A stretch of DNA of 63,056 bases, counting the filler, from Hyphochytrium catenoides (Eukaryota; Protista; Hyphochytriomycota): the NCBI GenBank assembly GCA_900088475.1. It is 5 parts of 5 records of this genome, joined end to end, with 100 filler letters (N's around TTAATTAATTAA, not from the genome) between each part and the next. Parts side by side here need not be neighbours in the genome. Positions count along the whole stretch, not along the records: positions 1 to 19,957 come from FLMG01004444.1; 4 more parts are not named here. One strand, given 5' to 3'. The notes beneath the pieces were generated by a model, which had not been told where the DNA came from, ran no database searches, and was given only the letters and a program-made list of their open reading frames with translations. Positions 1 to 19,957 of the stretch are shown piece by piece. The position numbers and the translations under genes are program-made. The stretch's first letter is position 1. The number at the start of each line of letters is the position of its first letter.

Positions 1-189
1 ATAGTGTGCCCGACAGACAGCGAGGCGGGGAGAAAGGAGAGAGACCCAAAGAAGACCAACCCTCACTCTTGTTTCCCATCAAGAGCCGAGGATGAAGGTC
101 GGAAAAATCGAGATAAGATAAAGGAAACGATCCGTAGATCAGGAGGCTGGAGGACAGTCTGTAGCCTTGTCGTGCTTCTTTATAATGAT

Positions 190-1235
190 AAGCAACCAAA
201 GAAGAAGGACGTACCTACGGGATCAGCAGCGCAGCAGACTGGCCTGGCCTTATAATTATGGAACCCCTTGATGTGGAGGGTTGGAGAACAGAAGAAGAAG
301 GTAATAAACAACTTCTGGCACAGGAGCAGCCGGACAGAAAGAGGCTCTTCTGGTCCGGCTCCCCGTCAAAGTAGAACTAGGTTTCATCTGGGAGGTATAG
401 TTCGACAGCGAGCCGGCCAGCAAGAGAAGAACGAAGAGGAACGAGTACGGGCCAGCACTGGCTCTTCATGAGTTAAGGAACATGATGAGGCAATAAGATA
501 TCATAAGACTTGAATGGGTTCTCAAGGGCAAAGCCGCCGCTGACCTCGCTGGCCTGCGACAGCTCCACACACACCAGAAGCCTTACGAAACCACTAGTGA
601 CGGAGGAAGACAGACTCGCGTGTGTAGAACGGTAGAACCACCTGTAGAACTATTGAGGGACGATACTCGATACATTATCATAGACTTTGAGGTTGGGATC
701 AAGAGAAGGGCCAGGGGATATTGCGACGAAGTCTGGGAGCTGTGTCTGACATCACGACGGAGCCGTGCAGTTATCCATTATGATATATAACAATAGTGCT
801 CGCTCAGATGTCAGGAACGGCCACTCACTAATGAGCTCACCATCTGACCAGACAGACCAACCAGAGGACTATATACGGACAAATATAGGATTCTCAATGC
901 CGTGGGCACCTCAGCAGCCATGAGAACAACCTAAGAATAGTATCCGTAGGTCTACTATTTGTACTGGTGATGAAGGAAGACGGAACAGCAGGGGATGCGG
1001 CCTTGAATGTTCGAGTCGAACTACCGTGACCGCTGTACTCTTAGGGAGTCTCTAAGGTCTTTCAAACAGCCTCTACTATGGGTTCAGAGAGACAGAAGTA
1101 TTCAGTTTGTCCACGTTCTTACTAGTCCCGCCCAGGAAAGGACTATGTGGGCAGCATTCTTGGCGCTATGGCAACCGCTATGGGAATTGTACGAGTAGAA
1201 TCATAGTGAGAGGATTGTCAGATCAATGAAGCGCT
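190..1235 (+). mobile_element. Decayed non-LTR retrotransposon relic (RNase H-like and zinc-knuckle remnants)
   Basis: Broken + frames give motifs in the expected order: VPTGS (~211, cf. YTDGS), FDSE (~401, cf. TDS), IRLEWVLKG..AAADLAG (~503-553, cf. RNase H WVKGH..ADxLA), then CPR..DYVGSILG (~1108-1165, cf. CxxC..xHxLGGC) and LYE*NHSE (~1187-1210, cf. YxxRHN). Many stops and frameshifts; motif matching by eye only. Confidence 0.4.
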
Positions 1236-1269
1236 GGCACGTCCTCCTCCTCCCATTGCAAGGCGTTAG

Positions 1270-2330
1270 TCTACTGATGACAATACCCAGTGCAAAGAGG
1301 TAGTAGGTTTTATGAGGCCTGTGGCTATTTTAAAGCTGTAAGGCCGCAGCCTCTCCCGCTAGCACGGGATATTTTGCGCGAGAGGGGCGGCTATGCTATG
1401 ATACCCGCCTCGTCGTGTCCTTGGCTGTGGGCAGGAGTGGCTTGTGCAGCAGCTTGTAAAATATAATGTGATGCTGCTCTATCTTCTTCATTCTGAATGC
1501 TCTCCGTCGTCTTTACGCCTTGATAGATCGGTAGAGAGTCGTCGGCAATCCATGCAGAACGCGCTTCATCAGATTCTGCAGGGTACTCCTCCTCAACAGT
1601 TGGATCCTTCTCTGTTTAATTGCTCGTCTTCTTTTTCAGAGTGATGATGGTCGGGTGGTCTGTCGTCCCTTCTTCCTTCTTCTCTCTTCCTTCCATCATT
1701 ATTGCTTAGAACAGCAATGATAATTCTTCTTATATATCCTCAGAATGATGCTGTTGGAGAGCGGAGAGAGGTGAAGCGACCAAGACGCCGTGGCTGTTGC
1801 TTCTTCTTTCTGTTCTTCTTCCTGTTGTTCTTCTTCTCCTTCTTTTCTTTATTTTTTTTCCTTCTCTCTTTTTGTCCACGTTGTTAACGAGCAATTGAAG
1901 GAGAATAGCTGCTACTACTACCTATAACTAAGATGAAGAAATAGGAGGAGAAGAAGGAGGAGAATATGAAGAACAAGGAGAAGAAAATGAGGACGAAGAG
2001 GAGGAAGACGAAGAAGAGAAAAGAAAAGCTATAACGCCGTGGCGGTCTCCTCCTCCTCCTCGGCTCAGTCAATGTCCGCCTCCTCCGCGACGACGCCCAT
2101 CAATAATAAGGGAAGAATCATTGTATAATAAGGGGAGAAGGCGGAGGAGGATGGTATGAAGCGCGCGCCTAGCACAATGTCATCATCGTCAAGCTCGACC
2201 GCCGCCGCGAGGCAAGCAAGCAAGCGAAGGGTCCACCAACTGCTCAAGAGGAATAATAATAAACTGCTGCTTCAGACGCTGAAGAAGCGCAATTCTTCTT
2301 CTTCCGACGCCACTTCATGTTCGCTAAAAT
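1270..2330 (+). pseudogene. Dispersed repeat copy A; possible decayed AAA-ATPase-like + PD-(D/E)XK nuclease gene
   Basis: Nucleotide similarity to 8620-9260: GTCATCATCGTCAAG..CGCCGCGAGGCAAG..CCAACTGCTCAAGAGGAATA here vs GTCATCATCATCAAC..CGCCGCGAGGCAAG..CCAACTGCTCGAGAGGAATA there. Residual peptides VVGF, CYD, KYN, LLFQS (1628), IYPQNDAV (~1732), GRII (2111) and VIIVK (2179) follow the motif order of the AAA-ATPase-like/PDDEXK_9 family. Confidence 0.4.
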
Positions 2331-2404
2331 CCGAAAATAGAAGGAGTTATTGTCGAGGGTGCGGGCACTCCTGGAGGAGATTTGAGGGTCACATAAGTAC
2401 CTTA

Positions 2405-2459
2405 TGTCTCCCTCCCTCTTCTCTCTTTCACATTTCTTTCTCTCTCTCTCTCTCTCCCT

Positions 2460-2499
<40 letters not shown>

Positions 2500-2537
2500 C
2501 TCGCTCTCTCGCTCTCGCTCTCGCTCTCTCTCTCTCG

Positions 2538-2579
<42 letters not shown>

Positions 2580-2640
2580 CGCTCTCTCTCTCGCTCTCTC
2601 GCTCTCCGCCTCTCTCCTTCTCTCTCTCTTCTCTCTTCCC
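2405..2640. repeat. (CT)n/(CTCG) microsatellite
   Basis: Directly visible CT dinucleotide tract with interspersed CTCGCT units. Confidence 0.95.
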
Positions 2641-2910
2641 TTGCACAACATTTCACTTCTAGAAGGAGGAGCACCAGCTGCGATGCTGCAGCCCCTCGGC
2701 TCGACACAGGGCAACGGAAGAGAAAAGCGGGAAGAGAGAAGAAGAAGCAGCAGGAGATTAAAAACCAAGAAGAGTCCGTTCGCTGAGAGTCGCGATAGAA
2801 GCAGCTCTTGGCCATTGATACAGTGACGGAGAGCGCCGGGAGCCAGGAGACGGGCCAGGGGAAGAGACTTGTGGCTGTGAGGAGCTGGGGATGGTGAAGT
2901 CTATGCGGAG

Positions 2911-3156
2911 ATGGGCCACAGGAGGAGAGGGCAAGCAGGGCTACCGAGAGATGAACACCTGGAGCTTGCCGCTGCGGTTCTGCAGGAAGAGACTGGAGTG
3001 CCCTGCTCTCCTCAGAGTATCTTGGCGGCAGCTCGCAATGACTCAGGGCCACAGGGAGAGACGGTAAGTACCAATGATCACACTGCGAGAGAGAGAGAGT
3101 GAGAGAGAGAGGGTGAGAGAGAGAGGGTGAGAGAGAGAGTGAGAGAGGGTGAGTGA

Positions 3157-3212
<56 letters not shown>

Positions 3213-3696
3213 AGACGGGGGAGGCGGGCTGCTGGAGAATAAATGCGGACAAGGAGAGAACGCTACTTACCTTCGCTTCGGCAGACACTCTTGCTTCTCC
3301 GGGTGCTGCACCACCTCTCCTTCCTACATCTGCTAGAGCTGCATGGGACGGAGGAGGAGCAGGAAAGAAGACACTGGGCGAAAGGGAGAGAATCCTGTCT
3401 TCTCTCTCCTGAGGAGTCCTTCTCCTGCTACTCTGCAGCCAGCAGCCCTCAGAGAACGCTAGCAATCTTAGTAGCGAGCCCAGGCTCTCGGGTCCAAGAA
3501 ATCTTGGACTCTGCTTGGCAGCAAGCTGAGACTCTGGAACGATATGGTGAGAGCCTTCTCTCTCACTTAAGACCATCGCGCTGGAGAGAGTAAGGAAGAG
3601 ATGAAAGAACGGAAGAAGAAACAAGGGAGTTAAAGGGGGAGCGGAGCAAAGGTGACGGGCCAAAGGGAAAGTGAGAAAGAGAGAGAGAGAGAAGGG

Positions 3697-3727
<31 letters not shown>

Positions 3728-6318
3728 TTAATAACCCGACAAAGTTGCCTTGCCCTTCTATTCTCTCTCACCTCTTGTCTTCTCTCAGACATTCTCCTGC
3801 AGGTGGTGCGCTATCATTTGTGGGTTATCGGTTATGATCCCACTTTTCTTTCTTTTCTCTCTCTCTCTTCATCTTCGCTGGAGGACTTGCTAAGAGACGT
3901 CCGTCCCCGGGAGCTCCTTCTGGCTCTGGGCTGGCTCATGGCAGCACACAAGACCTTTGACAAGCATAGAGAGAGAACCGTGAGAGAGAAAGACTTTCTT
4001 CACTTCCTGTCATGTTCCTCCTAACACCTCCAACAGACTTTCAGTCCTTTGCCTTGGTCACTCAGCCAGCTATTTGCCGTTTACTTTCTCTCCTGAAAGC
4101 TCCTCTTTGGCCCTCGGACGTAGCGCTACTTCTCTCTTCTCCGGCGTGAGAATAGCTTTGCTCTACTATCTGTGTCTTCCTTGTAACACTTCTCACTTTT
4201 CTCTCTCTCCTGCAGTCCGTAGTAGATATCCCTCCTGATGAGTGCATTCGAAGGAGCCTTTCAATGGCCCAGGAAATAGTTCAATCAAGAGTTAGGCAGC
4301 GCGCCTCCGCGAAGACAGACCCAAAGGTAGAGAGAGAGTGCTAACATTTGCATCTCCTGTTAGCAGCCAACGATCTTTCGCCTCAACTTCACTCTCTCTC
4401 GCTCTATTCCTCTCCTTGTGCATCGCTCAAGGTGGAGGATAGTATGCACATTGCACATCAGCTGCTGGGGCGACTGCGTTGCCGAGTGAAGGTCCACGAT
4501 GAGCTCCTGCATGCACGTGCCAAGCTGCGCCTCAGACTGCAGAGGCTACAAGGAGGTTCGGTTTGAACTTGCGCGTCTTTCGTCTTCCCTCCGATACTTT
4601 GTCCTCGCGTCCTACGGTCTCTAACCTTTCTGCTTCCTCTCTGTCTATACCAGCGAAGCTTTTCCTCCTCATCTCTTGCACGAATTTTGACAGTTAACTC
4701 TTCAGCAAATGTAATCTCTGTCTCCCTTCGTTGGCTATCCTCTCTGCACCTCACATGTACCACTAGTGATCTAGAGCCGCTGCCTCTGTCTCCTTCTCTT
4801 CTGCCCCAGAGCCGATCGGAAGGGTGACAAAGGGTTTACAGGGAGTTTCGTTTCTGTCTCATCGGGCTTTGGAGGCAGAAGAGCTCTTCTTCTGCTTGTC
4901 TCCTGATAGAACAACGGAAGAGCAAGATAATTTGGAGCAGCAGATGCTGCAAAGGTCAGCGTCCACGATGAGTCGTCTTTGCTGAGTCCTTTCGTGTATG
5001 CCGTCTCCTCAGCCCACCATATCAGGGCTGCCCCATGCCATTGCGTCTTCCGCGTTCTCATTGCCTTTCGACCACATATGACTCGCTTTAGATGTAACCT
5101 CTGGAACGTGCTCTATACCTCCTCATCACCCCTAACGAGCACCGCGCTGTACCTGGACTCTCTTTTCTTTTGAGTTTAACGTGTTGATTGCTATTCAACT
5201 CTTTTGGAGCTCGCTTAAGTCTCTTACGCCGATTTTATGCCCCTGAAATCTACCTCTGATATGTGTTAGACTGGTCGCTGTCAAGCAGGTGCATCGGAGT
5301 CTGCTGCTTGAAGACTCCTTCTGGGCCTGGATGAATGAGGTAGCGGAGCTGCACTTTAAGAATGCAACGGAGGTACAAGGATGTTTGAAGGCTTTCTCTT
5401 GTCGTCTCTCTCTCTCTCTCTCTCTTCCTACCGATGGCTCTCTGTTCTCTTTCTAGGCTCTCTAACGGTTATAACTCGGCACACCTTCTCCTGAGAGCCT
5501 TCCTTTCCGGGACTTCTGCTTCTCTCTCTCTCTTATTTTTCACTCCTTACTTTCAACGTCTTATTTCACCCCTTGTTTATCGCATTGTCAGGCTAGATAT
5601 TTCTCTTTGCCGCGATCCCTAAGATAACTTGTCACCCCTATTAAAGCAGAGGTGCACGGAGAAGCGTGTGAAGGAGATGCGAGAAGAGGCCCAAGCTGTT
5701 CCTTCCTCTGACCCCGCTCGTCTTCTGATCGAGGAGTTGAGGGCTGACTTAGCTGAAGATCTGAAGGGAAGGGCAGACACTGTCGAGGCAGTGCAGAATC
5801 GTTGGAGCCGGAACAAGGCAAAGCTAAGCAAGACAGAGTATGCAGCACGGTAAGAGGCGTTGACTATAGGTCTCCCGTTCCCTCTTGGTACCGTACTCCC
5901 TGCCAAAGTACGTCTTTCGCTTGCTTGCACCTCTTATGGCAATTCTTATTCCCCGTTATTCTTCATCTTTATCTGCCTATTTGACTGGTATTTGGATTTT
6001 TCTTTAGGCTCAACTGCGTCTTGCAGGCGTCCCGAGCTCAAGCAGCTTGCCGGGATGGCCGACAGTGAGCTACGCGGCCTCTCAGCGCATGTAGGGGGGA
6101 CGAAGTTGAAAGAAAACAGAGGCAACTCTGAAGAGAATGAGGCTGAATCCATCGGGGAACTACTTCGCCTGCTAGACGCTTTTTTGCTGGACGATTCGAC
6201 TGCTGCCGCGCTGAATGGACTTCGGGCAGAGCAGTGCCATGCCGTCCCCCGAACCATGGAAAGAGCTGAACCTATGACCGAGGTGCTGAGTCAAGCGTAT
6301 GGGTTCCACTTCCTTTGA
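2911..6318 (+). CDS. TEDC1: Tubulin epsilon and delta complex protein 1 homolog (multi-exon)
   Basis: Spliced peptides VVRYHLWVIGY..RELLLALGWL, HQLLGRLRCR and EDSFWAWMNE match my recollection of TEDC1/C14orf80 motifs (SQGY..SRELLLALSWL, WLMGKLRFR, VFWRWMDTV) in colinear order. GT-AG introns; last exon from ~6028 ends TGA 6316-6318. Internal exon boundaries partly uncertain. Confidence 0.75.
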
Positions 6319-6512: not shown

Positions 6513-7535
6513 TTAGGGTAAGTCTACGTCAACCCACTTGGCCTCTCCTACAGATAAGGCTTCCTCTCCTCTCTGTAGTAAGAGGTATTCATGCACGATT
6601 ACCAATGCTTTGTTCTTCGCGAAGACTGCCATTGGTCTGCTCCTCTCAATCTTACCCTGATTAAGAAGGGGTATATCTGTCAGAGGTTGTGTTACTTCCG
6701 ACCAAATAGGGCCGTGGTCATCCTCTGTAGCGCTATGTCTTAGTAGCTCATAGAATTCCTCACAAAAATGACGAAATCTTTCTGAAGATCGTAACAGTCC
6801 ATCTGCTGTAACCACGAATGCCTGGCATTCCTCTTGTTCTAAAGCCAGCCCAATTACTGTTTTCCAGCAGTGATATCCCAACTGCGTCTTTGTCAGGTCC
6901 GGCCAAACTGCAAGAGCTTTATTCTGACAGAAACAAATTAGCTGAGAAAGTTGGGGCCATATTCTCTGGTTGACAATGCCTTGAAGGAACAATGAATCTG
7001 ACTCCGGCAGATTGTGACTGGCCATAGCGAACGTCGTCATAACATGCTTCTTATGTTGATGGATGGCGACAGTGAAGGGGTCAGATGGGGAACGATATCC
7101 TCCTTGCTCGACCACTATCATGACGTATGTCCTGAGAGATAAGCTAAGGAGACCACATGGGTCAAACGCTTCCCCAGCGCGACCATTATCTCTCGCCGTT
7201 ATTTCTTCCTCTATGACGCCGTTAAGAAACCGGACACACTTTGTGGGATGTTCCGCCAAAGTTAACAGAAGAATTGACTTTAGCAAGAGCTCTTGTGACC
7301 GTCTGCATCCGCATTCACGATAAATGAGGGACACAAGGTGGGCTGTTGGCAAGACCTTTAGCCTGTCAAACAGTTCTCTTACATCATCTGGTGGAGTTTC
7401 GTTGGAATCACCCCGGTGAGTCAGGACGGCAGCTGGTGGCTTATCTTCTGTACGCAAGTGTAGGGAAAAGGTCTGTTGCGCCATCTTGACTCTCCTACTA
7501 TTCACGGCGGATATGAACGAGGCCCAGGTCTTCAT
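6513..7535 (-). CDS. Intronless ~340-aa hypothetical protein, weak RasGAP-domain resemblance
   Basis: Stop-free ORF with non-repetitive, protein-like composition (first ATG at 7535). Segments FLNGVIEEEI..AFDPCGLLSLSLRTYVMIV and WPQLSQLICFCQNKALAVWPD resemble RasGAP helices. Confidence 0.65.
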   Translation of the reverse strand: MKTWASFISAVNSRRVKMAQQTFSLHLRTEDKPPAAVLTHRGDSNETPPDDVRELFDRLKVLPTAHLVSLIYRECGCRRSQELLLKSILLLTLAEHPTKCVRFLNGVIEEEITARDNGRAGEAFDPCGLLSLSLRTYVMIVVEQGGYRSPSDPFTVAIHQHKKHVMTTFAMASHNLPESDSLFLQGIVNQRIWPQLSQLICFCQNKALAVWPDLTKTQLGYHCWKTVIGLALEQEECQAFVVTADGLLRSSERFRHFCEEFYELLRHSATEDDHGPIWSEVTQPLTDIPLLNQGKIERSRPMAVFAKNKALVIVHEYLLLQRGEEALSVGEAKWVDVDLP

Positions 7536-8619
7536 TTGCTGAAACGTAGGGAACTTGGAGAATTGAGGCACTCTTTATCCTTTTGCGCGTCTTGCCTTCC
7601 CTAACTTCTTATTTGGCTAGGACTTGGTAGCAGCAACGGCAGATGTCTAGCGATACCTCCTGGCGGCGTCAGAAAGAAGCTACACGGCAGCGAGCAAAAG
7701 AATATAACAGGCGACACTGCAGTAGTAGGCCAACTCTGGTGTTTGTTTTTTGGCTAATAACAAGTCGTGGGATGTATGGATATTCTAGGAAGTGTTTTAT
7801 TGGAACTTGGGAAGTCAGAAGTTACGGACGTGGCGGCCACAAGTCTATCTTGTATTCTAGTGCCACTGCAAAGCTTTGTATTATGTGTATGTCTTGGCGT
7901 TTATTTATAAAAAATTAGGATGTGTTTGGCATTCATCACTGGCTCGATAGATAGTTAGTTCTACATCTGTCAGGTCACGTCCCAGTAGACGGCGTAGGAC
8001 CATCATAGCGTGTTAGTTACACAATCTTCGCTGCCTCAGCTCTGTATATCCCAGGATCCGTGTGGAACCGCGGCACAAACGGCACCTCCCAGGGAGTTCT
8101 TATAGCGGACGAGCGGCACCTAAAATTTCTTACAAGAATTGCCAAACAGACTGCAGTCTTATTAGTATAAAAGCAAACCACATGAGATCTTGATGTGTTT
8201 GTCTTGCGTGAACTGGCAGATACTATAAGATCCTCGTTCTGCTTTTCCGGTTGCAAAATGAGTAACACAATTGGTAGAATCGACTCTGAAAGACATAGAA
8301 TTATTGTTCATAGCTTCTAGGCCCTTCGCTTTTGAACAGTTACAGGGTTGGAAACAGTAAGGCCTAGTAGAACTAGAATGAGCAGTCTAGTACTCAAAAA
8401 TTTCTGCTTGATGAGCCAAAAGAAATAGTTTTTTTATACTCTTTTTATAAAAAAGCCCTGACTAATTCCTGCGGACCACCAGTCAAGCTTTATTTACTAT
8501 ACAAGGGTTCCCTATTATAATAAGTGCAGTTTATTTTTGTTGAATTAAAATAAATGAGCGCTACTACTGACTACTACTATTCAGAAGAAGAAGGCGACTA
8601 CACTTATTTTTTTTAAAAA

Positions 8620-10036: not shown

Positions 10037-13000
10037 ATGGTCAATCGCTTGTACCTGAGGCGCGGCGGGAAGCCATTAGAATCTATTCTAGTAATTACTT
10101 TCATCGTCTCTGCACTTCTTCAACTCGTATTTTGGATACCAACCTCTGCTACCGAGGGTGCAGCGACGAAGGCCAGCGACGGTATTGCTCTACCCTTCCA
10201 GCCTTAACGCCGGGGCGCGTTGATCTTATCTAAATCCTCTTACCACATCAGGTAGCTTTCTGAGTGCCATCAAGGGCCATTGCGGATATTCGTCATGGCT
10301 AGCCACAAAGCGAAACTGGTGCACCGCCACAGAAGTCACAGCCTACTGCGAGGCTGGGATCCGTACGGACCCATGTACGGGAAGCATTACGATGGGCACA
10401 AGTTCCAGAACTTACAAAGCATGGAGCGGCATTCAGTGTGGCAGTTCCCTTCTTTCTCCTGGGGAGCTGACTGTTATAACAATGTAAGCCGGGGATGGCA
10501 GATTGACCAACTTTTGTTACACTCATTGGTTCTCTTCTCCCTGACAGCGATATGACGAACTTTAATATGGCATGTGATCTCTCTCAGTTAGCAGAGGTCT
10601 CTGGAGGGTTGTTGGAAGTCAGCTACTGGTAGGGAGTGACACATGGATCTAATGCCATCACTGCCTGATTTGTCTTCTTTTTGCTTTTAACTTGCCCTGA
10701 CCGTCTTAATAACGCCATAGGACATTCAACACAAACAAGTTAACAGGCTCCATTCCGTCTTGGGTAGCAAGATCAAACACGCAATACCTGTATGTAATGC
10801 AAGCTTCACCATTTGAACAGTCTTTGACACAGGTGCCTATCTTAGGTCCATCAAATCCAATAGACTATCATCCGGACTCGCTATGCTAGAAAGCGCTAAT
10901 GCCCTCAAATATCTGTAAGTGATCTTCCAGAGAGTCAATGATCAGAAGCTAACAGATTTACGTCGGTGCGACAGCGACCTCTCACAAAATCTAATGGCTG
11001 GAGCCATTCCTGGCATTCTTTCTAGCTTAACAAGTCTGGAAACTGTGCTGTTAAAGAATAACTCACTCACTGGTGGCTTGCCAGACTTGACCCATCTCCT
11101 TATGTTGAAAACGCTGTAAGCCACTGTCTGACAATCATGCCCCCCTGTATCGTCTGCAAGCTTTTAGCTGACTCGAACCCATCATAGTGACTTGACGTCG
11201 AATCAGCTATCCGGATACCTGCCAGATCTAGGAAACTGTACACTGCTAAGTACTTTGTAAGCACCGCCTCTTACCTGTTATTCTCTGCAGACCTAACGGC
11301 AGTTTCGTAGAGCCTTGGCGAACAACACTCCTGGGTTCCAAGGCGAAATACCACGCTCCCTCATCTCAATGGCAGGATTCGATGCTACAACAGGTGTGGA
11401 CAAGCTTGTCAAAATGTAGGTTTAACATGGTCAGCTGCCGTCCCTTGACCTCATAATATTAACGGACCCCGGGGTCTTTCTTCAGTGACCTGTCATTCAA
11501 CAACCTGACTGGAAGCATACCTTCAGCCATTGGAGATAGAGCTATTCTCACCTACCTGTAAGAACTAAACCCACTGATAGAGATGGAAAGCAGTCCTCAC
11601 ATCTCCTTTTTGCTTCGACGCGCAGGGATCTCAGTGGAAACAGGCTAAGCGGTTCTGTGACCACCCTACCCACCTCCTTGTAAGTCTGTTACTCCCTTGT
11701 TCATTGCTCTTGCCATAAAAAGACTAATGCTAGTCTTTCACAAACAGAACGAACACTGGCGCTTATTTGAGGATCGGAGGGGTGAACCAAAGCTTCAACT
11801 GCCCTTTTCCGACCTCGCACAGACAACAGTTAATGGCAGACCTTTCAGCCAGCTGTACTTGTAGACCTGGATTCTTTTGTCCGACCACTGTTCAAGAGTG
11901 CGTGTGGGATTGCACACTGTGCCCTGGTGGCACTACTAGCTACACTGCAAATTCTCTTGAGTGCTCGGAAAGCATTCCAAGTGAGTATTCTGCTGCCCGA
12001 ACTTTATTGCACCCATAGTTGCCGGATCTTGGCTCCTCTTTCATCCTCTCTTTCAGAAAGTCCTACGCTTCTACCAACACCTCCTAACTTACTTTTCGCT
12101 GACTCAGGTACTATCCCTGAGCCCGATCCCACAAACAGCCCTACCCCCACTCCTCTCAATAGTTCCTCACCAACGCCTCCCCCTACTCTTTCTCCTAGCT
12201 CTGACTCCACGCCTTTTGCCACTCCTCCTCCTGCTTTTTCACCAACGCCTTCCCCTACCTCTGATCCCATGTCTTCTCCTATTCCTGAACCCACGCCTTC
12301 TCCTACTCCTGACCCCACACCTTCTCCTACTCCTGACCCCACTCCTTCTCCTACTCCTGACCCAACTCCTTCTCCTACTCCTACTCCTGAACCCACGCCC
12401 TCTCCTACTCCTTTTCCTACTCCTGAACCCACGCCCTCTCCTACTCCTTTTCCTACTCCTGAACCCACGGCCTCTCCTACTCCTTCTCCTACTCCTTCTC
12501 CTACTCCTGACCCCACTCCTTCTCCTACTCCTACGCCTGACCCCACGCCTTCTCCTACTCCTTCTCCTACTCCTGCCCCCACTCCTTCTCCTACTCCTTC
12601 TCCTACTCCTGAGCACACGCCTTCTCCTACTCCTTCTCCTACGGCTTCTCCCATTTCTGAACACACGCCTTCTCCTACTCCTGAACCCACGCCTTCTCCT
12701 ACGCCTCCTCCTTTCCCTACCCCTTCCCCTATCCCTTACCCCACTCCTTCCGCTACCCTTGACCCTCCTGCTCCCTCACCAGCACCATCCCCTACCATTG
12801 AAACCCCTCCTTCCCCTACTCCGTCGCCAACTCCTTTCCCTATTCCGTCGCCAATTCCTTCGCCCACTTCTGATCCTACTCCTTCACCTGCACCTTCCCC
12901 TACCCCTAATCCCACTCCCTCGGATACCGGTGACCCCCCTCCTTCTCCTACTCCGTCACCAACTCCTTCCCCTACCCCTTCCAGTCCTTTTCCTACTCCT

Positions 13001-16000
13001 TCGCCAGCACCTTCCCCTAACTCTGACCCGACTCCTCTCCCTAGTTCCTCACCTAACCCTCTCCTTACTTCACCAACTCCCCTATCTACTTCACCACCCA
13101 CTGCAATACCTTCTTCCTCCTCGCCTAGTTCTGAGATAGACCAAACACAGTCTCCGAATACCCCTTTGCCTACTGCTGCTCCAACGCCATTGCTGCCCAC
13201 CCCTTCCTCAGCCACTTATCCTACCCCGACGCCCACTATTTCCCCTGCTCCGTTACCTACTCCGCTGTCTCCAGGACCTTTCTCCACTCCATCTCCCGTG
13301 GCTTCTCCTACGGCCTCTCCTGGTCAGCTTTCGCCCTCTATCTCTCCTACCTTAACACCAACTCCGGCCCCACAAGAAGTGAACGAGGCTTCACCTGCCC
13401 CAGTGCCAGTGCCCTCTTCGGAGCCAGGTCCAGCATCTCATCCTTTGGAGGAGGGGGTGCAAGCCTTTACAAATTACCTTCTTTCACTTACTAGCCCCAA
13501 CCTGACGACCTTCAAAGATGACAGTACGTAACATACCTCGGTCGCTGAGTAGGAAATAGTTCCTTCATTCTGACCGTTGCCTACTCGTATGTCGTCGCCA
13601 CTCAATATTGCAGTTATATCCCTGTATATTCTGAAGACAGGGTGCAATTATCGGAACTGGAAGGTAACCCGGCAAAATTGGTGTACTGGTGGCAGTCCTA
13701 CCCCACTCTGCACCTCAGGACTGTTGACAGATCCATGCACTGGTCTCATTATTGCGGGAGAAAGCTCGATCCAGACGCACCCGTGGAAAGGAATCGTGTG
13801 CTCACCGTCCACCGAGATGGATGATGTTGGAGTCGTTACTGACATGTAAGTGTGTCTTCACAAAGCCGCTACGATCGTATCAGAGTGTGTTCACTCTGGC
13901 TTTGCGGTGACTAACTAGATTGCTCAATAGCTCCCTTCCGCAGGTTAACCTGTCTTGCAATCTGTCCGACCTCCCGTTTTCTAGCAAGGGTCTCAAGGCA
14001 GTCGAGGGATGGTAAGAATCTTGTTTCTTTTTATAAAATATATAGAATGGCTCCTTGACAGCAAGCTGTTTGCATTCACATATAGGGACTTAATGTTTAC
14101 CTCCATAACGGGTAACATTCCGCACGTTCTCAAGTCTGACACTGTGGAGCGACTGTAAGCGTGGCTGCTAAAGAGTCTTTTATTAGAAGACGTATTATCT
14201 GGATCAACATCTCATGTTCACTTGCAGCCGTCTTAGGGGAAATCTCCTTGATGGCTCCTTGATAGACTTCTCCAAATGGTGGCCAGTTCTGTCCATCCTG
14301 TAAGTGTAATGGAGGCGATCAATGGCTGAAATGAAAGCCTATAGACTCTAACCGATGGTGGCCATGACCGCCTTCGCCCGACAGAGACATCTCCAGAAAC
14401 CGCCTCGAGGGTCAAATTCCCAGCACCATCTCAAACCTAACCGTTCTTCGAGAGCTGAACTTGTCCAACAACTCTTTTTCGGGTCATTTCCCAGCATTGC
14501 CTCAAGATACTTTGAGAATCATGTAAGCACGTATCCATCAGCTGCTAGAAAGTTCGCTCTTCACTAGCTGGTTGAAGATAACATCCTATAGCAACGAGTA
14601 TCAGAGACACACTCTACTTTCAGGCAAAACTAGCAGTGCTGCTTCTGACCTTCTCACATCTTTCTGGCTGGCAGAGATCTCAGCTTCAATGGCTTCAGCG
14701 GACCTATACCCCCCATCGTCTCTCCTTATCTGCAAAAAATGTGAGCATGATGCACCCGTGTATGCAGTCTAATGAGACAAACTCATGTTTCACTGGTTGT
14801 CACAACAGCACCCTAGCTTGCAATGTCCCTGGCTTTGAGGGTCCACTACCAGCAGAAATTTTCACCGTGGCTGGCTTTGTGAGTGGAGCTGATGTCCTTA
14901 CTCATGTGTGAGTGCTCTCCACATCGCTTATCTACCTAGGTGGCCAGTTGGTTAGTTCATTAGCCATCCCTGACGACAACGATTGTTGTATAGGGATATG
15001 CATGGGAATAGGGTTAACGGATCGATCCCAGCGGCGGTATCTCAGCGCCAGTCTCTGATATACCTGTTAAGTCTGCTGCCTTGCTTACATGACTAGTAAA
15101 GCGGCAGCCAATCTAACCCGCAGTTGATTCTTGCTTCTTGCGCGCTTTTCTTTGCCGGGTTTAATTGCAAACCTATTCTCAGTGATCTTAGCTCGAACCT
15201 TCTTTCCGGACCCGTCCCGGTGTTGCCAAAGCACCTGTAAGTACCTTAATAAGAGCACAATCCGAAGGATAAGGGTTAGGAGATTGCCTTCTTGCAAACG
15301 AGACCACTTACTCTAACCCTTCGCACTTATTACTTCTCGCAGGACGGCGGTCAATCTATCTGGCGATCAGCACGATTTTGACTGTCCGCTTCCTGAACTT
15401 ACTGCGAACAACAGCGGTTACCTTGCTAATCTTACTTGTGCCTGTAAGCCTGGATTTATGTGCCCCAGTTCGGCGTCGGATTGTCGCTTCGACTGCGCCC
15501 CCTGCCCACCAGGACATTTTTCCACCGAACCATTTGTGAGGGAGTGTACTCCATGCCCTTCTGGCACCATTCCAGCGCCCGATGCTCAGAGCTGTGTTAG
15601 TTGCGAACAAGGGACAATTGCGTCACTACCAGGCCTTTCCCAGGTCCGTCTCGTGAAACAGTACCCCTAGTATTGAGCAGGAGTCAAGAACTAGTTTTCT
15701 TCTGCAGTGTCAACCTTGTCCGGCGGGCACCATGCCAAATGCGTTGAAAGCGGCCTGCAACTCTTGTCCCCCGGGACAGTTTAGTGCAGGTGGCCAAGGC
15801 AGCTGCTTTTCATGCCCTCCAGGTTCAGTCGCCGTCGCGGAAGGCGCAAGCGAGGTAAGGGCTTTACCAACATACCATTATCGTTGACAACGTTACCCCG
15901 TAACAGCCGCTCTTCAAGTGTGTACTATGCCCTCCTGGTACGCATAGCAATGTGGCAGCGGTTGAGTGTGTAGCCTGTGGTCCAGGAAATTTTGCGAACC

Positions 16001-19000
16001 GTACAGGCTCCTCAGAGTGCCAAGCATGTGAAGCAGGATATGTGTCTGGCAACGCTGGCATGACAGAGGTCAGAGGTTATGCCCTCCTTCAAGCTGCACT
16101 TACCCTGATGTTGAGCCCGGTCTCGCGTGATGCTCTCACTTCTACAGTGCACTGCTTGCCCAGAAGGTTCCGAGTACCTGAACTCCACCACATGTCTACT
16201 TTGTCCCCCTGGCTCCTTTAAGGCTCGGAATGATACCAGCGGCTGTGCACCGTGTCCTCCTGGCCAAGTGGCATCTCAACCAGGGTCTTCAAAGGTACGG
16301 TCGGAAGCTACCTCTCACGCTGTGTGCTGGGTTCAATGTCGGCTAATGGAGCAACAGTGCTCTCCTTGTGCTGCCGGCAGTTATGCTCAGAATAGCTCAA
16401 GTTGCCTTCTTTGTAACCCTGGGACATTCAACCATAGAGAGGGCCTTACCGCATGTACCCAGTGTTTGGTTGGGACCTATTCTAACGTGTCTGGTTCAAT
16501 AGCGGTAATTCGAGAATGAGTTTCCCGTTCATATATGGGCGGCTCGACTTTAACTTTACCTCACGTTCTAACGGAGGCCAGTGTTTGAACTGTGCCGCTG
16601 GAACCACTTCCACTTTGGGCCGAGATGCATGCTTCTTCTGCCCTGCAGGAACCTTTTGGCAAAACGCGGGCTCTGGATGCCAGGAATGCCCGTCAGGGAC
16701 TGTACAACCGAATCCTGGTTCTAAACAGGTAAGCAAGAGCAGCTGGGGAGTAAGGGACCAGAGTGTATTCGTATAACTGTTGTTGACAACCTTTTCGAAC
16801 AACTAAAACAGTGCATGGCTTGCTCTGTCGGCGCGGCCCCATCTGCGAACAAAACTGAGTGTTCAGTTTGCCCAAGAGGCTACGTCGCTCCAAATCCAGC
16901 GTCATCAACATGCCTTCCATGTCCAAAGAACTATTACGGAAAAAATTCAACAAGCTGTCTGCCTTGTCCTCCAGGGTCCGAAGCTCCCTTAGAAGGCTCA
17001 TCAAATTGTACACTATGTGGCAAGGGCTACTTTCAGAAAGAGTACGGAAGCCCATGCATAGCCTGTCCCAAAGGGTAAGCCCTTATAGAGGGAATTCTTA
17101 TTTGCTGTCGGAGGGGAAAAGCTGCTGACCACCCCGACCACATTTTCCCGGTACCTATTAAAGTACGTTTCAGGCAGACAACGGAGGAACCTTCTGCCGC
17201 GATTGCAGCATAGGGTCGTACACTGATGTCTTAGGGAGCTTCATTGTAAGCCCTTCTATAACTCATAACACTGCCTTGTTGTGCGTTTTCTTAGCTTTTT
17301 CTGCTTCCTTCAGTGCAACCCCTGTCCTTCAGGGACCCAGTGGGAGAGTCCTAGCTCGTGTGCAACCTGCAAGACTGGATACCATAGTTCTGGCTCTGCT
17401 GACGTGTGCAGGCCGTGCGCTGCAGGAACATACTTTGACGAGGATACAAAGGTTATCCTCTCTCTAGCAGACGATGGCAATCGACCATCTTTATTCACAA
17501 CACATTACGCTATTTACTCTGCAGAAGTGCCATGATTGTCCAAAAGGGTTTTTCCAGGATCAAGTCGGTCAGAGCATGTGTAAATCATGTCCTCCGGGAA
17601 CCTACCAAAACGTCTCTTCATCGCTTTCTTGTTCACCGTGTCCTGGGGACCGTATCTCCCCTGAGTCGGGGTCGGCAAGCTGTAGGCCACCTAAACCCGG
17701 TTACGAGAGGCTGAACTCAAGGGAAGAAACACCATGTCCAGAAGGTCATTATCGGTCAGAAGCCGATGAGGTTTGCCAGCCCTGTCCGGTTGGTAGTTAC
17801 GCTGATAGTCAGGTATGTCCAGCCTCTCAAGGTGGCACCATGGCGAAAGAATTGAACTCTATCCTAGGCTCTCGTCAGTTGCAAGAGCTGCAGTCCCGGA
17901 ACATACACTGACCAACCAGGAGCTATCTTATGTCAGCAAGTCCCGTCTGGGTACTACATTGGCAATGGAATGGCTTCATCCTACCTTCCTTGTCCTCCAA
18001 ACACCTTCGCTAACGAGTCTGGGTCTTTTCGCTGTTATGACTGCGGCTTTTATGGCTTCACGCTTACCGCTGCCCCTACGGAGTGTGTCAGCGTTGCCAA
18101 CACCTCGGTATTGCAGGAGCATGACATGATGGACCCCGCGAGCTGGTTGGTTGGGTTCGCGAACATTACCTGGGTTCCTTTACCGGAAAGGATTATTCTT
18201 CTATCTCCGTTTGACATGAAGATTGCCTTGGCGAAGACGCTAAACGTCAGCCTTCTCGCAGATGACAAAGTACTGCTTGTTGCAGAGTTAGGTATGAGGG
18301 CCACGTCTGCTAATGACCCTTCCGCCTTACCTGCACCTATGCAAGACGGTTCTATTAGCTTCATGGATGATGGATCTCAGGTTGAAACCAGGCAATCGTT
18401 CTCCTTCTACCTGAGGGACAGCACCATGGGAAGGTCTGCCAGCCATGCCCAGTTGATGTACAAGAACTACTCGAGTATTATTTCAAGTCCAGAGACCCAT
18501 CTGCGATTGATTTTCTTCCTCAGACTATTGGTCCAATCTAACGTCAGCAATATGAGCGTCAGCGCGCAGATTTCTAAAATCATCTTATCGGGTAAGTTCT
18601 TAAGAATGTAGTGTTAAATTTATGTACCTAGCAAACCCCTGACCTTTGTAAATAAGATGGGTACTCCCTCTGTCCTGCCGGGGAGGTGCTGGACCCGCTT
18701 GCAGGGACCTGCATGGCATGTGGACCTGGCCAACACGTGAAATTAGTTTCAGGCCGCCGGATTTGTGCAGATTGTGATCCAGGATCCTATGCGACCATGC
18801 CAAGGTCTAGAGTCTGCGAGAACTGTCCAGCCAACCACTTTTCAGGTGCCAAATCGTCAACTTGCGCCCCATGCACGATACAGGTCTTTCCGGATCAGTG
18901 TGTCGCTTTTTTCTTGATTCGAGTCGGGATACCGCTTGCGGGGCTCTTTGTCGTTCTACTTCTTGCTCTGGGCCTACGATGCGCGAAAAAGCAAAAGAGC

Positions 19001-19057
19001 ACTGTCGTCGGTAAAGACGGCCGTCAACCTCTCCCTAAGGTGAAGGACATTGAATAA
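10037..19057 (+). CDS. Large single-pass receptor-like protein: hydrophobic leader, LRR module 1, Pro/Thr/Ser stalk, LRR module 2, Cys-rich (GCC2_GCC3/ephrin-receptor-like) repeats, TM helix, short tail
   Basis: Roughly 30 or more GT-AG exons that splice in frame. Leader [17 protein letters not shown]; LRR N-caps (NWCT..TDPCTG..WxGIxC) at 10252-10483 and ~13614-13845; plant-type LRRs (LDLSxNxLxGxIP); PTPSPTP stalk ~12057-13525; CxxCPxG repeats ~15450-18080 and ~18660-18880; [25 protein letters not shown] followed by RCAKKQK; TAA 19055-19057. Confidence 0.85.
12280..13000 (+). repeat. Coding tandem repeat of 12/24-nt and longer units encoding [12 protein letters not shown]
   Basis: Repeated CCTTCTCCTACTCCT(GACCCCACT/GAACCCACG) units within the Pro-rich exon. 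Confidence 0.95.
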
Positions 19058-19080: not shown

Positions 19081-19810
19081 TTATGCACTATTTATCTCTT
19101 GCAACGCGACAACGTCCCAGAGTTTCCAGTGTGCATCAGCAATCGTTCTGTTTCCCCGGGCGCAGTGGTGAAGGCGCATCCCTAGGAATAATTCCCCAAT
19201 AGAAAGCGCCTCTTTTTCTCCCTCTCCAGACTCCTCGTCCGACCGCCACTTCGCTTCTTCCACGCCATTAGGGTCTGTCTCTCTTGTATGAAGAGCTATA
19301 CAAAGGCAGAAAGCGACGACAGAAATTAGGGAAGTAGGAGAGAGAGAGAAGAGAGAGAGAGGGGAGGGGCGAGGGAGAGGGGACGCAGATGGAGAGAGGA
19401 AAAGAGAGAGAGAAAGGAAAGAGAGAGAGACAGAGAGAGAGAGAGAGGGAAAGAGGGGAGAGAGTCAGAAAGAAAGTCTCTCAAGATTTTGCGCTATATT
19501 CTATGGAAAAAAAAACAGTCAAGGAACCAACCAGTGCTGTCTCTCTCCTGCCGGTCTCTCTCCGGATGTCTCTCCTGGTCTCCATTTCTTCTCTCTGCCA
19601 AAAGGACCTCTGCCCTTTCAAAAAAATTGCCGGAGAAGAGACTCCCCGGTCTCCTCAGAGCAGCCTGGACTCTCTCCCAGAAAGAGGGAAAGCTCGGCTT
19701 GGGACAGAGAGAGAGAGAAAAAGAAGCATTGACCAGGTCAGCAAGTGGAAGCTCCAAGTCTTTATCTTCAAAGCGCTTGTGCAGCAGAGTCAGTCTCTCT
19801 CGATATCCAG
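19081..19810 (-). CDS. 3' two exons of a gene truncated by the contig end; weak SGNH/GDSL hydrolase C-terminus resemblance
   Basis: Exons 19810-19532 (279 nt, phase 1-1) and 19295-19081 splice in frame via GT..AG. The C-terminus LFLGMRLHHCARGNRTIADAHW resembles SGNH block V (DxxH..G..IA..W) but lacks the Asp. Confidence 0.5.
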
Positions 19811-19957
19811 CTTGAAAAGAAGAGGAGACAGAAGGACAAAGTCAGAGAAGAGGAATCTGACCAGGACTATCTAAGTTAGTTTTAATGGGACAGGGCGAGG
19901 GAGAAAAAGGAGAGAGAGAGAGAGAGAGCGAGAGAGGGAGAGAGAGAGAGAGAGAGA

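What the first reader, a model, noticed from the sequence alone, without database searches (positions are those of the whole stretch)
10037..19057. Twin-headed LRR receptor: two homologous LRR sensor modules separated by an extensin-like stalk, on a Cys-rich rod, with no kinase
Seen: cap 1 ([33 protein letters not shown]) aligns nearly gap-free with cap 2 ([33 protein letters not shown]). Each is followed by nine LRR-type units in eight exons of matching length (81,69,69,141,69,105,72,54 vs 81,69,72,138,66,99,72,54 nt) and a matching C-cap ([22 protein letters not shown] vs [22 protein letters not shown]). Both share an atypical repeat ([13 protein letters not shown] / [13 protein letters not shown]). 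This indicates an old intragenic duplication of an entire module. A ~490-aa PTS stalk would place one head far beyond the other, and the tail is only ~26 aa. I do not recognise this architecture. Inference: a bivalent adhesion, prey/pathogen or mate-recognition receptor that needs a co-receptor.
Basis: partly seen in the sequence, partly recalled or inferred. Interest (0 to 1): 0.78.

Follow-up and report, generated by a model that had tools for sequence, protein, structure and literature searches.

The report
Two-headed LRR surface receptor gene
A gene of the water mould relative Hyphochytrium catenoides most likely encodes a very long surface protein with two copies of a leucine-rich-repeat binding head, the outer one held away from the inner one on a long proline/threonine/serine stalk; its relatives in oomycetes have one head, and no transcript yet proves that the two heads are made as one protein.

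Summary
Window 10037-19057 (+) reads as 33 exons with 32 GT-AG introns of 54-152 nt and one frame of 2,184 codons. The order is: signal peptide, head 1, a 489-codon Pro/Thr/Ser exon, head 2, a rod of Ephrin_rec_like Cys-rich repeats, an unassigned insert, one TM helix and a 26-aa tail. No kinase is present.

The two heads share 38% identity over 353 residues. They have the same exon layout, including identical 232-nt cap exons and the same intron phases.

The genome is very probably Hyphochytrium catenoides. The only relatives found have one head: one paralog in the same genome, and ~900-aa hypothetical proteins of Saprolegnia and Thraustotheca. The basic architecture therefore already exists, uncharacterised, in databases. 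The doubled head on a stalk is new.

Whether both heads sit on one transcript rests on a 90-nt candidate intron (13524-13613). Its splice signals, phase and position match the ancestral intron before the cap exon. No transcript or gene model could be reached.

I put a single gene at about 0.7. The main rival is two genes: a secreted LRR-plus-stalk protein and a one-headed receptor. "Extensin-like" is not supported, because the stalk has no SPPP motif. Function is inferred only.

The parts
10037..10181 (+). Exon 1: start codon and signal peptide (basic n-region, 15-residue hydrophobic core); ends ...S-D then a phase-1 split codon
   Evidence: hydropathy 2.73 over 15 aa
10252..10483 (+). Exon 2: N-cap of head 1, 232 nt, 5 Cys, ends W-x-G-I-x-C plus first strand
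10548..10628 (+). Exon 3, head 1, 81 nt (first irregular LRR with C-D-L)
10721..10789 (+). Exon 4, head 1 LRR, 69 nt
10846..10914 (+). Exon 5, head 1 LRR, 69 nt
10975..11115 (+). Exon 6, head 1, two LRRs, 141 nt
   Evidence: LRR_1 17.3 bits, under the cut-off
11188..11256 (+). Exon 7, head 1 LRR, 69 nt
11311..11415 (+). Exon 8, head 1 atypical repeat (N-N-T-P-G-F ... A-G-F), 105 nt
11486..11557 (+). Exon 9, head 1 LRR, 72 nt
11626..11679 (+). Exon 10, head 1 last LRR, 54 nt
11748..11980 (+). Exon 11: C-cap of head 1 plus first Cys-rich repeat (8 Cys), 233 nt; homology with head 2 stops at its 3' end
12057..13523 (+). Exon 12: Pro/Thr/Ser stalk, 489 codons, built partly of 12-150 nt tandem repeats; last codons ...K-D-D then a phase-1 split
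13524..13613 (+). Candidate intron 12 (90 nt, GTACGT...TGCAG, CTGAC 40 nt before the 3' end) that joins stalk to head 2; holds in-frame TAA 13529-13531 and the rival start ATG 13589-13591
13614..13845 (+). Exon 13: N-cap of head 2, 232 nt, same length and entry phase as exon 2
13931..14011 (+). Exon 14, head 2, 81 nt
14086..14154 (+). Exon 15, head 2 LRR, 69 nt
14228..14299 (+). Exon 16, head 2 LRR, 72 nt
14385..14522 (+). Exon 17, head 2, two LRRs, 138 nt
   Evidence: LRR_1 32.4 bits, over the cut-off of 20.6
14675..14740 (+). Exon 18, head 2 LRR, 66 nt
14809..14907 (+). Exon 19, head 2 atypical repeat (C-N-V-P-G-F ... A-G-F), 99 nt
14994..15065 (+). Exon 20, head 2 LRR, 72 nt
15183..15236 (+). 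Exon 21, head 2 last LRR, 54 nt
15343..15643 (+). Exon 22: C-cap of head 2 and start of the Cys-rich rod (11 Cys)
15708..17812 (+). Exons 23-31 of the rod: 15708-15854, 15919-16068, 16148-16294, 16358-16504, 16582-16728, 16812-17074, 17164-17245, 17314-17451, 17525-17812. Five are exactly 147 nt with 6 Cys each. Some acceptors are ambiguous by 3-12 nt.
   Evidence: (PF07699 above cut-off)
17868..18591 (+). Exon 32: last rod repeats, then a ~190-residue Cys-free insert of unknown fold (about 18045-18591)
   Evidence: (no Pfam)
18657..19057 (+). Exon 33: two more Cys-rich repeats, TM helix (about 18902-18976), 26-aa basic tail, stop 19055-19057

Best explanation
The region is one 33-exon gene of Hyphochytrium catenoides encoding a type I membrane protein of about 2,184 residues.

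From the outside in, the protein is built as follows:
- a cleaved signal peptide;
- a distal head: a 5-Cys N-cap, nine plant-type 23-24-residue LRRs including one atypical repeat, and a Cys-rich C-cap;
- a 489-residue Pro/Thr/Ser spacer, probably heavily O-glycosylated and extended;
- a proximal head of the same build;
- a stiff rod of about 35 C-x-x-C...G units (Ephrin_rec_like / TNFR-like);
- a ~190-residue insert of unknown fold, then two more Cys units;
- one TM helix and a 26-residue tail with no enzymatic domain.

Origin. The gene belongs to a small family seen so far only in oomycetes and this hyphochytrid, and all other members have one head. The second head arose by an old internal tandem duplication. 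The duplicated segment ran from the 3' end of exon 1, through intron 1 and the head exons, into the C-cap exon. The stalk exon grew at the duplication junction by repeat expansion.

Inferred mechanism. The protein is a non-catalytic surface binding protein (receptor or adhesin). Each head offers an LRR concave face for a ligand. The stalk would put the distal head roughly a cell-wall thickness beyond the proximal one. Any signal would pass through the TM helix and short tail to a partner protein.

Shown here: the exon structure, the homology of the two heads, the domain families and the relatives. Inferred: splicing of intron 12, glycosylation, topology and function.
For: Continuous frame:
- 33 exons, 6,555 nt and 32 GT-AG introns of 54-152 nt, with no internal stop.

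Stalk exon:
- It is open in one frame only; none of 2000 dinucleotide shuffles is open.

Candidate intron 13524-13613:
- It is 90 nt long.
- The donor scores 4.9 on a matrix built from the other 31 introns, whose own scores run from 2.4 to 11.6. Only 3.8% of exonic GT sites score as high.
- The acceptor scores 5.9, against 3.1-11.2 for the other introns. Only 5.3% of exonic AG sites score as high.
- A CTGAC motif lies upstream of the acceptor.
- The acceptor sits at exactly the position of the acceptor before cap 1 and before the paralog's cap: ten residues before the first Cys, with identical 232-nt cap exons.
- The donor is in phase 1 directly after an Asp codon, as are the exon-1 donors of this gene and of the paralog.
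- These signals persist although the duplicates are only 38% identical, which argues that the intron is still in use.

Head 2 has no signal-peptide exon of its own:
- The only in-frame ATG (13589) lies in the candidate intron.
- It would recruit the cap's own first helix as the hydrophobic core, without a basic n-region.
- Only 57 nt separate TAA 13529-13531 from that ATG, and the sequence upstream is GC-rich coding sequence rather than the AT-richer region found before exon 1.

Domain families and relatives:
- PF07699 scores above its cut-off in six rod pieces.
- LRR_1 scores above its cut-off in exon 17.
- The oomycete homologue P0010 matches cap 2, an LRR exon and C-cap 2 and carries LRR_1/4/8 plus seven Ephrin_rec_like stretches.
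Against: - No transcript, EST or published gene model could be consulted.
- The donor and acceptor of intron 12 lie in the lower third of this gene's own splice-site scores.
- An in-frame ATG with a moderately hydrophobic stretch exists at 13589.
- The upstream half alone (signal peptide, LRR, Cys hinge, Pro-rich tail) resembles a known secreted architecture, plant LRX.
- No two-headed relative was found in any other organism.
- Function is pure inference. Structure predictions were of low confidence, and the fold search of the cap found nothing.
Confidence: 0.65

Rival explanations
1. There are two adjacent genes. Gene A (10037-13531, about 914 aa) is a secreted protein with a signal peptide, an LRR head, a Cys hinge and a Pro/Thr/Ser tail. 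It would be analogous to plant LRR-extensins and would be held in the wall by its glycosylated tail. Gene B starts at ATG 13589 and is an ordinary one-headed family member of about 1,281 aa.
For: - The stalk frame stops at TAA 13529-13531, 5 nt after the proposed donor.
- An in-frame ATG at 13589 opens an ORF running straight into cap 2, with an 11-residue stretch of hydropathy 2.3.
- Every relative found has one head.
- Intron 12 has below-median splice scores.
Against: - Gene B would have 57 nt for the 3' end of gene A plus its own promoter and leader.
- Its 'signal peptide' has no basic n-region and no small residue at -3, and it consumes the conserved first helix of the cap.
- The ancestral acceptor, a branch-point motif and a phase-1 donor after an Asp codon would all have survived unused since a duplication now at 38% identity.
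- The stalk has no SPPP motif and only 3 Tyr, so the likeness to extensins is loose.
Confidence: 0.22
2. It is one gene with two products. Splicing of intron 12 gives the two-headed membrane protein. Retention of the 90-nt intron meets TAA 13529-13531 and gives the secreted one-headed LRR-plus-stalk protein.
For: - The intron is short and a multiple of three.
- It has weaker-than-median signals and carries a stop 5 nt inside it.
- The retained form would be a complete secreted protein.
Against: No expression data of any kind were available. Nothing in the sequence requires regulated retention.
Confidence: 0.08
3. It is an artefact or a dead gene: the short-read scaffold wrongly joins two loci inside the Pro/Thr repeat, or the upstream half is a decaying duplicate.
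For: - The assembly is Illumina-only (PMC5795050).
- The stalk contains tandem repeats.
- At least 16 other loci carry similar repeats, and some contigs end in them.
Against: - There is no N in the contig.
- The other repeat loci are only 65-79% identical, too far apart for a repeat-mediated misjoin.
- The frame stays open across the whole repeat.
- All 22 exons of the two heads keep open frames, canonical splice sites and the conserved cap Cys/Trp pattern.
- The genome holds no other orphan half-gene that the pieces could belong to.
Confidence: 0.04

Closest known systems
Oomycete hypothetical proteins THRCLA_08639 (Thraustotheca clavata, 900 aa), SDRG_06268 (Saprolegnia diclina, 916 aa) and SPRG_08575 (S. 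parasitica, 909 aa), named by UniRef 'Tyrosine-protein kinase ephrin type A/B receptor-like domain-containing protein'
   Same: They share the multi-Cys N-cap ending W-x-G-I-x-C, plant-type LRRs with an atypical N-N-S... repeat, a Cys-rich C-cap, an Ephrin_rec_like rod, a Cys-free insert before the last repeats, one TM helix and no kinase.
   Different: They have one head, no Pro/Thr/Ser stalk, a shorter rod and a longer tail (~50 aa) conserved between genera. Identity to the window's caps is only about 30-37%. None has been studied.
Single-headed paralog in the same genome, contig C2851 (minus strand, about 11548 down to 6540)
   Same: It has the same exon plan (81, 69, 69, 135, 69, 69, 72, 54 nt LRR exons, phase 2) and a signal-peptide exon ending S-D with a phase-1 split. 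It also has a rod, an insert, a TM helix and a 16-aa tail.
   Different: It has one head, a cap exon of 259 nt, and 34-36% identity to either head of the window gene.
Plant LRR receptor-like proteins (RLPs such as EIX1/2 and the Cf proteins)
   Same: They share a signal peptide, an N-cap ending C-x-W-x-G-V-x-C, the L-x-x-L-x-L-x-x-N-x-L-x-G-x-I-P repeat type, a TM helix, a short tail, no kinase and dependence on co-receptors (the last from established knowledge). Plant RLPs and RLKs are the next-best sequence matches of the oomycete homologue's LRR part.
   Different: Pfam LRRNT_2 does not match the caps even at E 10, and the cap has five Cys. The Cys-rich rod replaces the plant juxtamembrane region. 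There are two heads.
Plant LRX proteins (LRR-extensins)
   Same: The order signal peptide, LRR domain, Cys-rich hinge, Pro-rich region matches exons 1-12.
   Different: LRX proteins end in Ser-Pro(3-5) extensin repeats with Tyr cross-link motifs and are secreted. Here there are 0 SPPP motifs and 3 Tyr, and the frame most likely continues into a second head and a membrane anchor.
Platelet glycoprotein Ib alpha; Slit and Toll ectodomains (from established knowledge, not tested here)
   Same: GPIb-alpha holds an N-terminal LRR head far from the membrane on a mucin-like O-glycosylated stalk. Slit and Toll carry several separately capped LRR blocks in one chain.
   Different: There is no sequence relation. 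None combines two capped LRR heads separated by a ~490-residue mucin-type stalk with an Ephrin_rec_like rod.
Fungal wall-stress sensors Wsc1/Mid2 (from established knowledge, a functional analogy only)
   Same: They are walled osmotrophs' type I proteins with a binding head, a long Ser/Thr-rich glycosylated stalk spanning the wall, one TM helix and a short tail.
   Different: The head domains differ (WSC against LRR), there is no Cys-rich rod, and their tails have known partners.

Membership tests
Oomycete/hyphochytrid cap-LRR-Ephrin_rec_like-TM family (THRCLA_08639 type) | Multi-Cys N-cap with invariant W-C ... C ... P-C-x-G ... W-x-G-x-x-C pattern | tested here: met
   A profile of the three Hyphochytrium caps finds the oomycete proteins. 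In the 17-sequence alignment C10, W22, C23, C32, P40, C41 and G43 are invariant. tblastn of P0010 against cap 2 gives 37% identity, E 1.8e-5.
Oomycete/hyphochytrid cap-LRR-Ephrin_rec_like-TM family (THRCLA_08639 type) | LRR block followed by Ephrin_rec_like rod, one TM helix, no catalytic domain | tested here: met
Oomycete/hyphochytrid cap-LRR-Ephrin_rec_like-TM family (THRCLA_08639 type) | Cys-free insert between the rod and the last Cys repeats | tested here: inconclusive
   An insert is present at the same place in the window gene, the paralog and P0010. No sequence similarity was detected between the inserts, and the model of that part has low confidence.
Oomycete/hyphochytrid cap-LRR-Ephrin_rec_like-TM family (THRCLA_08639 type) | A single head per protein | tested here: not met
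   There are two complete heads in one reading frame if intron 12 is spliced. This is the point of novelty.
Pfam Ephrin_rec_like (PF07699) | Score above the gathering cut-off of 23.1 bits | tested here: met
   Scores of 27.3 to 62.8 bits in six exon pieces of the rod.
Leucine-rich repeat (Pfam LRR_1, PF00560) | Score above the gathering cut-off of 20.6 bits | tested here: met
   Head 2 exon 17 scores 32.4 bits. Head 1 exon 6 scores only 17.3 bits as an isolated 46-residue exon, but it is homologous to exon 17 (z = 9.2). The joined heads were not scanned.
Plant LRR receptor-like proteins | LRRNT_2 N-cap (PF08263) | tested here: not met
   There is no match to any of the three caps at E up to 10, and the family is absent from the precomputed domains of P0010 and P0016.
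Plant LRR receptor-like proteins | Plant-specific 24-residue repeat with N-x-L-x-G-x-I-P, TM helix, short tail, no kinase | tested here: met
   Read directly from the exon translations. Tail of 26 aa. No Pkinase match.
Plant LRX / extensins | Ser-Pro(3-5) repeats and Tyr cross-link motifs; secreted, no membrane anchor | tested here: not met
   0 SPPP, 1 SPP and 3 Tyr in 488 residues. Whether the protein ends at 13531 is untested.

The most novel reading that the evidence does not exclude
The window contig and contig C2851 may be two strongly diverged haplotypes (idiomorphs) of one locus in this diploid. The flanks are collinear and 86-90% identical from base 1 of both contigs, but the cores are unrelated at the DNA level. 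One haplotype carries the two-headed receptor on the plus strand together with a unique 352-aa ORF. The other carries a one-headed receptor of the same family on the minus strand together with a 650-aa TM protein. That pattern would mark a balanced recognition locus, for mating type or self/non-self, in a lineage where sex has never been observed. The doubled head would be one allele's specificity determinant.
Probability: 0.15. Interest if true: 0.8.

Novelty: new variant of a known kind. Interest (0 to 1): 0.5.

Why it matters
Walled osmotrophic stramenopiles have no characterised surface receptors of this kind. The family itself (a plant-type LRR head on an ephrin-receptor-like rod) is unstudied, although it is conserved from Saprolegnia fish pathogens to Hyphochytrium.

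A version with two heads set a wall's thickness apart would be a natural experiment in how a non-kinase receptor reads ligands on both sides of a cell wall. It is also a clean example of module duplication with intron positions preserved.

If the paired contigs are alleles, the locus would be a first candidate for a recognition or mating locus in hyphochytrids.

If the two-gene reading is right, the finding reduces to an LRX-like wall protein next to an ordinary family member. That would still be a useful annotation but not a surprise.

Tried and rejected
- **Earlier findings and contig look-ups.** No earlier notes, contigs of the relatives or transcript-derived contigs could be seen.
- **Gene models or transcripts of this genome.** The cap profile against 1.84 billion representatives gave only 15 weak hits and nothing from this genome. 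No annotators' model exists to compare with.
- **Insert domain.** There is no Pfam match. A search with the homologous part of P0010 found only P0010 itself.
- **Structures.**
  - AlphaFold2 of P0010 with a two-row alignment gave mean pLDDT 52, with the insert below 50. It was not used for a fold search.
  - The cap 2 model with 17 rows gave pLDDT 61, and Foldseek against the PDB found nothing below E 6. The cap's fold is unresolved beyond an N-terminal helix.
- **ESM Atlas.** Searches with the two neighbouring ORFs gave nothing usable.
- **Literature.** No paper links LRR and ephrin-like repeats in oomycetes or names the three homologues.
- **Naive exon chaining.** A naive dynamic-programming exon chain mis-framed part of the rod. 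It was replaced by junction-by-junction inspection.
- **Branch-point motif.** CTRAY occurs in 12 of 20 known introns against 24% of exon windows. This is only weak evidence.
- **Rejected readings.**
  - Extensin (no SPPP motif).
  - GPI anchor for a stand-alone gene A (the C-terminus is not hydrophobic, read).
  - A downstream kinase exon (the stop is followed by the conserved non-coding flank).
- **Joined model.** The spliced protein was never sent to a search or fold tool. Exons were handled one by one by reference, and the joined step was left out.
Full report
**Source of the window.** The window is contig C3391 of a 61-Mb assembly of 4,759 sequences.
- The published Hyphochytrium catenoides assembly has 4,758 scaffolds plus one mitochondrial genome (PMC5795050).
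- An ORF on contig C3799 of this genome matches the solved H. catenoides channelrhodopsin HcCCR at 456 bits over 195 residues, which is essentially identical.
- I therefore take the organism to be H. catenoides, a walled, diploid, osmotrophic stramenopile that is sister to the oomycetes. This is an inference from two independent matches, not a label given by a tool.

**Gene structure.**
- From ATG 10037 to the stop at 19055-19057 there are 33 exons totalling 6,555 nt and 2,184 codons.
- There are 32 GT-AG introns of 54-152 nt, and no stop falls inside any exon.
- Exon 1 encodes a signal peptide with a basic n-region and a strong hydrophobic core.
- Exons 2-11 form head 1 and exons 13-22 form head 2.
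- Exon 12 is a single 1,467-nt exon encoding 489 residues: 37% Pro, 18% Thr, 17% Ser. It is partly made of tandem repeats with periods of 12-150 nt. It is open in only one forward frame, and none of 2,000 dinucleotide-preserving shuffles is open, so it is coding.
- The rod (exons 22-33) is built largely of 147-nt exons with six Cys each. It matches Pfam Ephrin_rec_like above the cut-off in six pieces, with weaker TNFR-like and NCD3G matches on the same stretches.
- Exon 32 also holds a Cys-free insert of about 190 residues with no family match.
- Exon 33 ends with a 25-residue TM helix and a 26-residue basic tail.
- No kinase or other catalytic family matched anything.
- A few rod acceptors are ambiguous by 3-12 nt.

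**The duplication.** The two heads are homologous along their whole length.
- The caps match at 44% identity, E 1.7e-13.
- The ten exon pairs give 134 identities in 353 aligned residues. Z-scores run from 3.7 to 16.3 for nine of the pairs.
- The cap exons are both 232 nt and both are entered in phase 1. All LRR exons are phase 2 and differ in length by at most 6 nt. The 54-nt last LRR exon and the 233-nt stretch up to the end of the first Cys repeat also correspond.
- Homology ends exactly at the 3' end of exon 11. There head 1 turns into an intron and the stalk, while head 2 runs on into the rod.

**Relatives.** The genome holds only one other cap, on contig C2851.
- That gene has one head, its own signal-peptide exon and the same eight-exon LRR layout, followed by a rod, an insert, a TM helix and a 16-residue tail.
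- The three heads are about equally distant from one another: 38% between heads 1 and 2, and 34% and 36% from heads 1 and 2 to the paralog. They are also about equally distant from outgroups, with cap 1 slightly more diverged.
- A profile of the three caps, searched against 1.84 billion representative proteins, gave 15 weak hits.
- The real relatives among them are oomycete proteins: full-length THRCLA_08639 of Thraustotheca, plus fragments from Lagenidium and Nothophytophthora and from unnamed assemblies.
- Follow-up searches added SDRG_06268 and SPRG_08575 of Saprolegnia.
- All full-length relatives are about 900 residues with one head, and they carry LRR and Ephrin_rec_like domains.
- Several fragments end in T-H-M, as expected if an ORF caller read into an intron at the same place as the window's cap-exon donor.
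- No paper mentions these proteins.
- The one-headed architecture therefore exists, uncharacterised, in public proteomes. The two-headed form was found nowhere else.

**One gene or two.** Everything hangs on 13524-13613.

For splicing:
- The donor (A|GTACGT) and acceptor (TTGCAG|) are canonical.
- They score 4.9 and 5.9 on matrices built from this gene's other 31 introns. That is low-to-middle within the true range, but only 3.8% of exonic GT sites and 5.3% of exonic AG sites reach those scores.
- The 90-nt length is typical, and a CTGAC motif lies upstream of the acceptor (weak evidence).
- The acceptor is at the very position of the acceptor before cap 1 and before the paralog's cap.
- The donor splits a codon in phase 1 right after an Asp codon, exactly as the exon-1 donors of this gene and of the paralog do.
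- This points to an internal tandem duplication that carried the end of exon 1 and intron 1 along with the head. Survival of these signals at 38% protein identity suggests that they are still used.
- Head 2 has no signal-peptide exon.
- The only in-frame ATG (13589) lies 57 nt after the stalk's stop. It has no basic n-region, and it would use the cap's conserved first helix as its hydrophobic core.

Against splicing:
- No transcript evidence could be reached.
- The splice scores are not strong.
- The ATG exists.
- Exons 1-12 alone would make a plausible secreted protein with the domain order of plant LRX proteins.

I put one gene at about 0.7, counting the variant with regulated intron retention, two genes at about 0.22, and artefact or pseudogene at about 0.04. 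Against a misassembly:
- the contig has no N;
- similar Pro/Thr repeats elsewhere are only 65-79% identical;
- the frame stays open through the repeat.

**Likely working.** This section is inference from the families involved.
- LRR solenoids of the plant type bind peptides, proteins or glycans on their concave face.
- Ephrin-receptor-like and TNFR-like Cys repeats form stiff disulfide-bonded rods.
- Pro/Thr/Ser runs with 118 S/T-P dipeptides are typical O-glycosylated extended spacers. At roughly 0.2-0.25 nm per residue, 489 residues would span on the order of 100 nm, about the thickness of a cell wall.
- The protein would then carry one head near the plasma membrane on the rod and a second head at or beyond the outer face of the wall.
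- With a 26-residue tail it cannot signal by itself. It either acts as an adhesin or wall-linked sensor, or hands a signal to a partner, as plant RLPs do.
- The stalk is not extensin-like: it has no SPPP motif and three Tyr.

**Structures.** The structure predictions did not help. The homologue P0010 gave a mean pLDDT of 52. The cap gave 61 and showed only an N-terminal helix and short strands, and the fold search returned nothing.

**Method note.** The spliced protein has no reference, so it was not sent to any search or folding tool. Exons were searched and aligned singly by reference, and frame continuity was computed exon by exon in scripts.

**Verdict.**
- The duplication reading is supported.
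- 'Single transcript' is probable but unproven.
- The function is unknown and only inferred.
- This is a new variant (a doubled head on a mucin-type stalk) of an existing but unstudied pseudofungal receptor-like family, with moderate interest.
- The paired, diverged contigs around it deserve a separate look.

Noticed in passing
window 1-6200 and 19105-19957; C2851 1-6085 and 15647-16499 (L008, L009): The window contig and contig C2851 are collinear in both flanks (86% and 90% identity) and both start at the same homologous base 1. Their cores (12.9 kb against 9.6 kb) do not align as DNA, and they carry the receptor-family gene on opposite strands. Three random 2-kb control regions of the genome have no such diverged second copy. 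The pair is either strongly diverged haplotypes of one locus or an old segmental duplication with turnover of the core.
   Followed up: partly
window 6516-7571 (-): A 352-aa intronless ORF between the left flank and the receptor gene. It is unique in the genome and has no Pfam match. The ESM Atlas gives only weak likeness to helical-repeat (ARM-like) proteins. It is absent from the C2851 version of the locus.
   Followed up: partly
L009 4651-6603 (+) = C2851 13651-15603: A 650-aa ORF with a central TM helix and no Pfam or Atlas match. It is present only in the C2851 version of the locus, next to the right flank.
   Followed up: partly
window 2407-2636, 3087-3212, 3673-3726, 19338-19464, 19910-19957: Long (GA)n/(TC)n microsatellites fill the flanks, and the contig ends in one. 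The same motif recurs at hundreds of places in the genome and seems to be a common cause of assembly breaks.
   Followed up: no
window 12057-13523 and at least 16 other contigs (for example C2829:1-305, C4515:47457-47784, C4108:138466-138875): Pro/Thr-coding repeats of the same kind (65-79% identical as DNA) occur at many loci. Glycosylated PT linkers therefore look like a common building block of this organism's surface proteins.
   Followed up: no
P0004, P0005, P0009, P0012, P0013 (Lagenidium, Nothophytophthora and unnamed assemblies): Annotated or ORF-called proteins of 126-170 aa that consist of a signal peptide and the cap only, and end in T-H-M. They are probably gene models truncated at the conserved intron after the cap exon, so peronosporalean members of the family may be under-annotated.
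   Followed up: no
G000:C3799:6417-7183 and C2531:7223-8107, 15707-16882: Three channelrhodopsin genes (HcCCR, HcKCR1/2 type) were found while identifying the organism, two of them in tandem on C2531.
   Followed up: no
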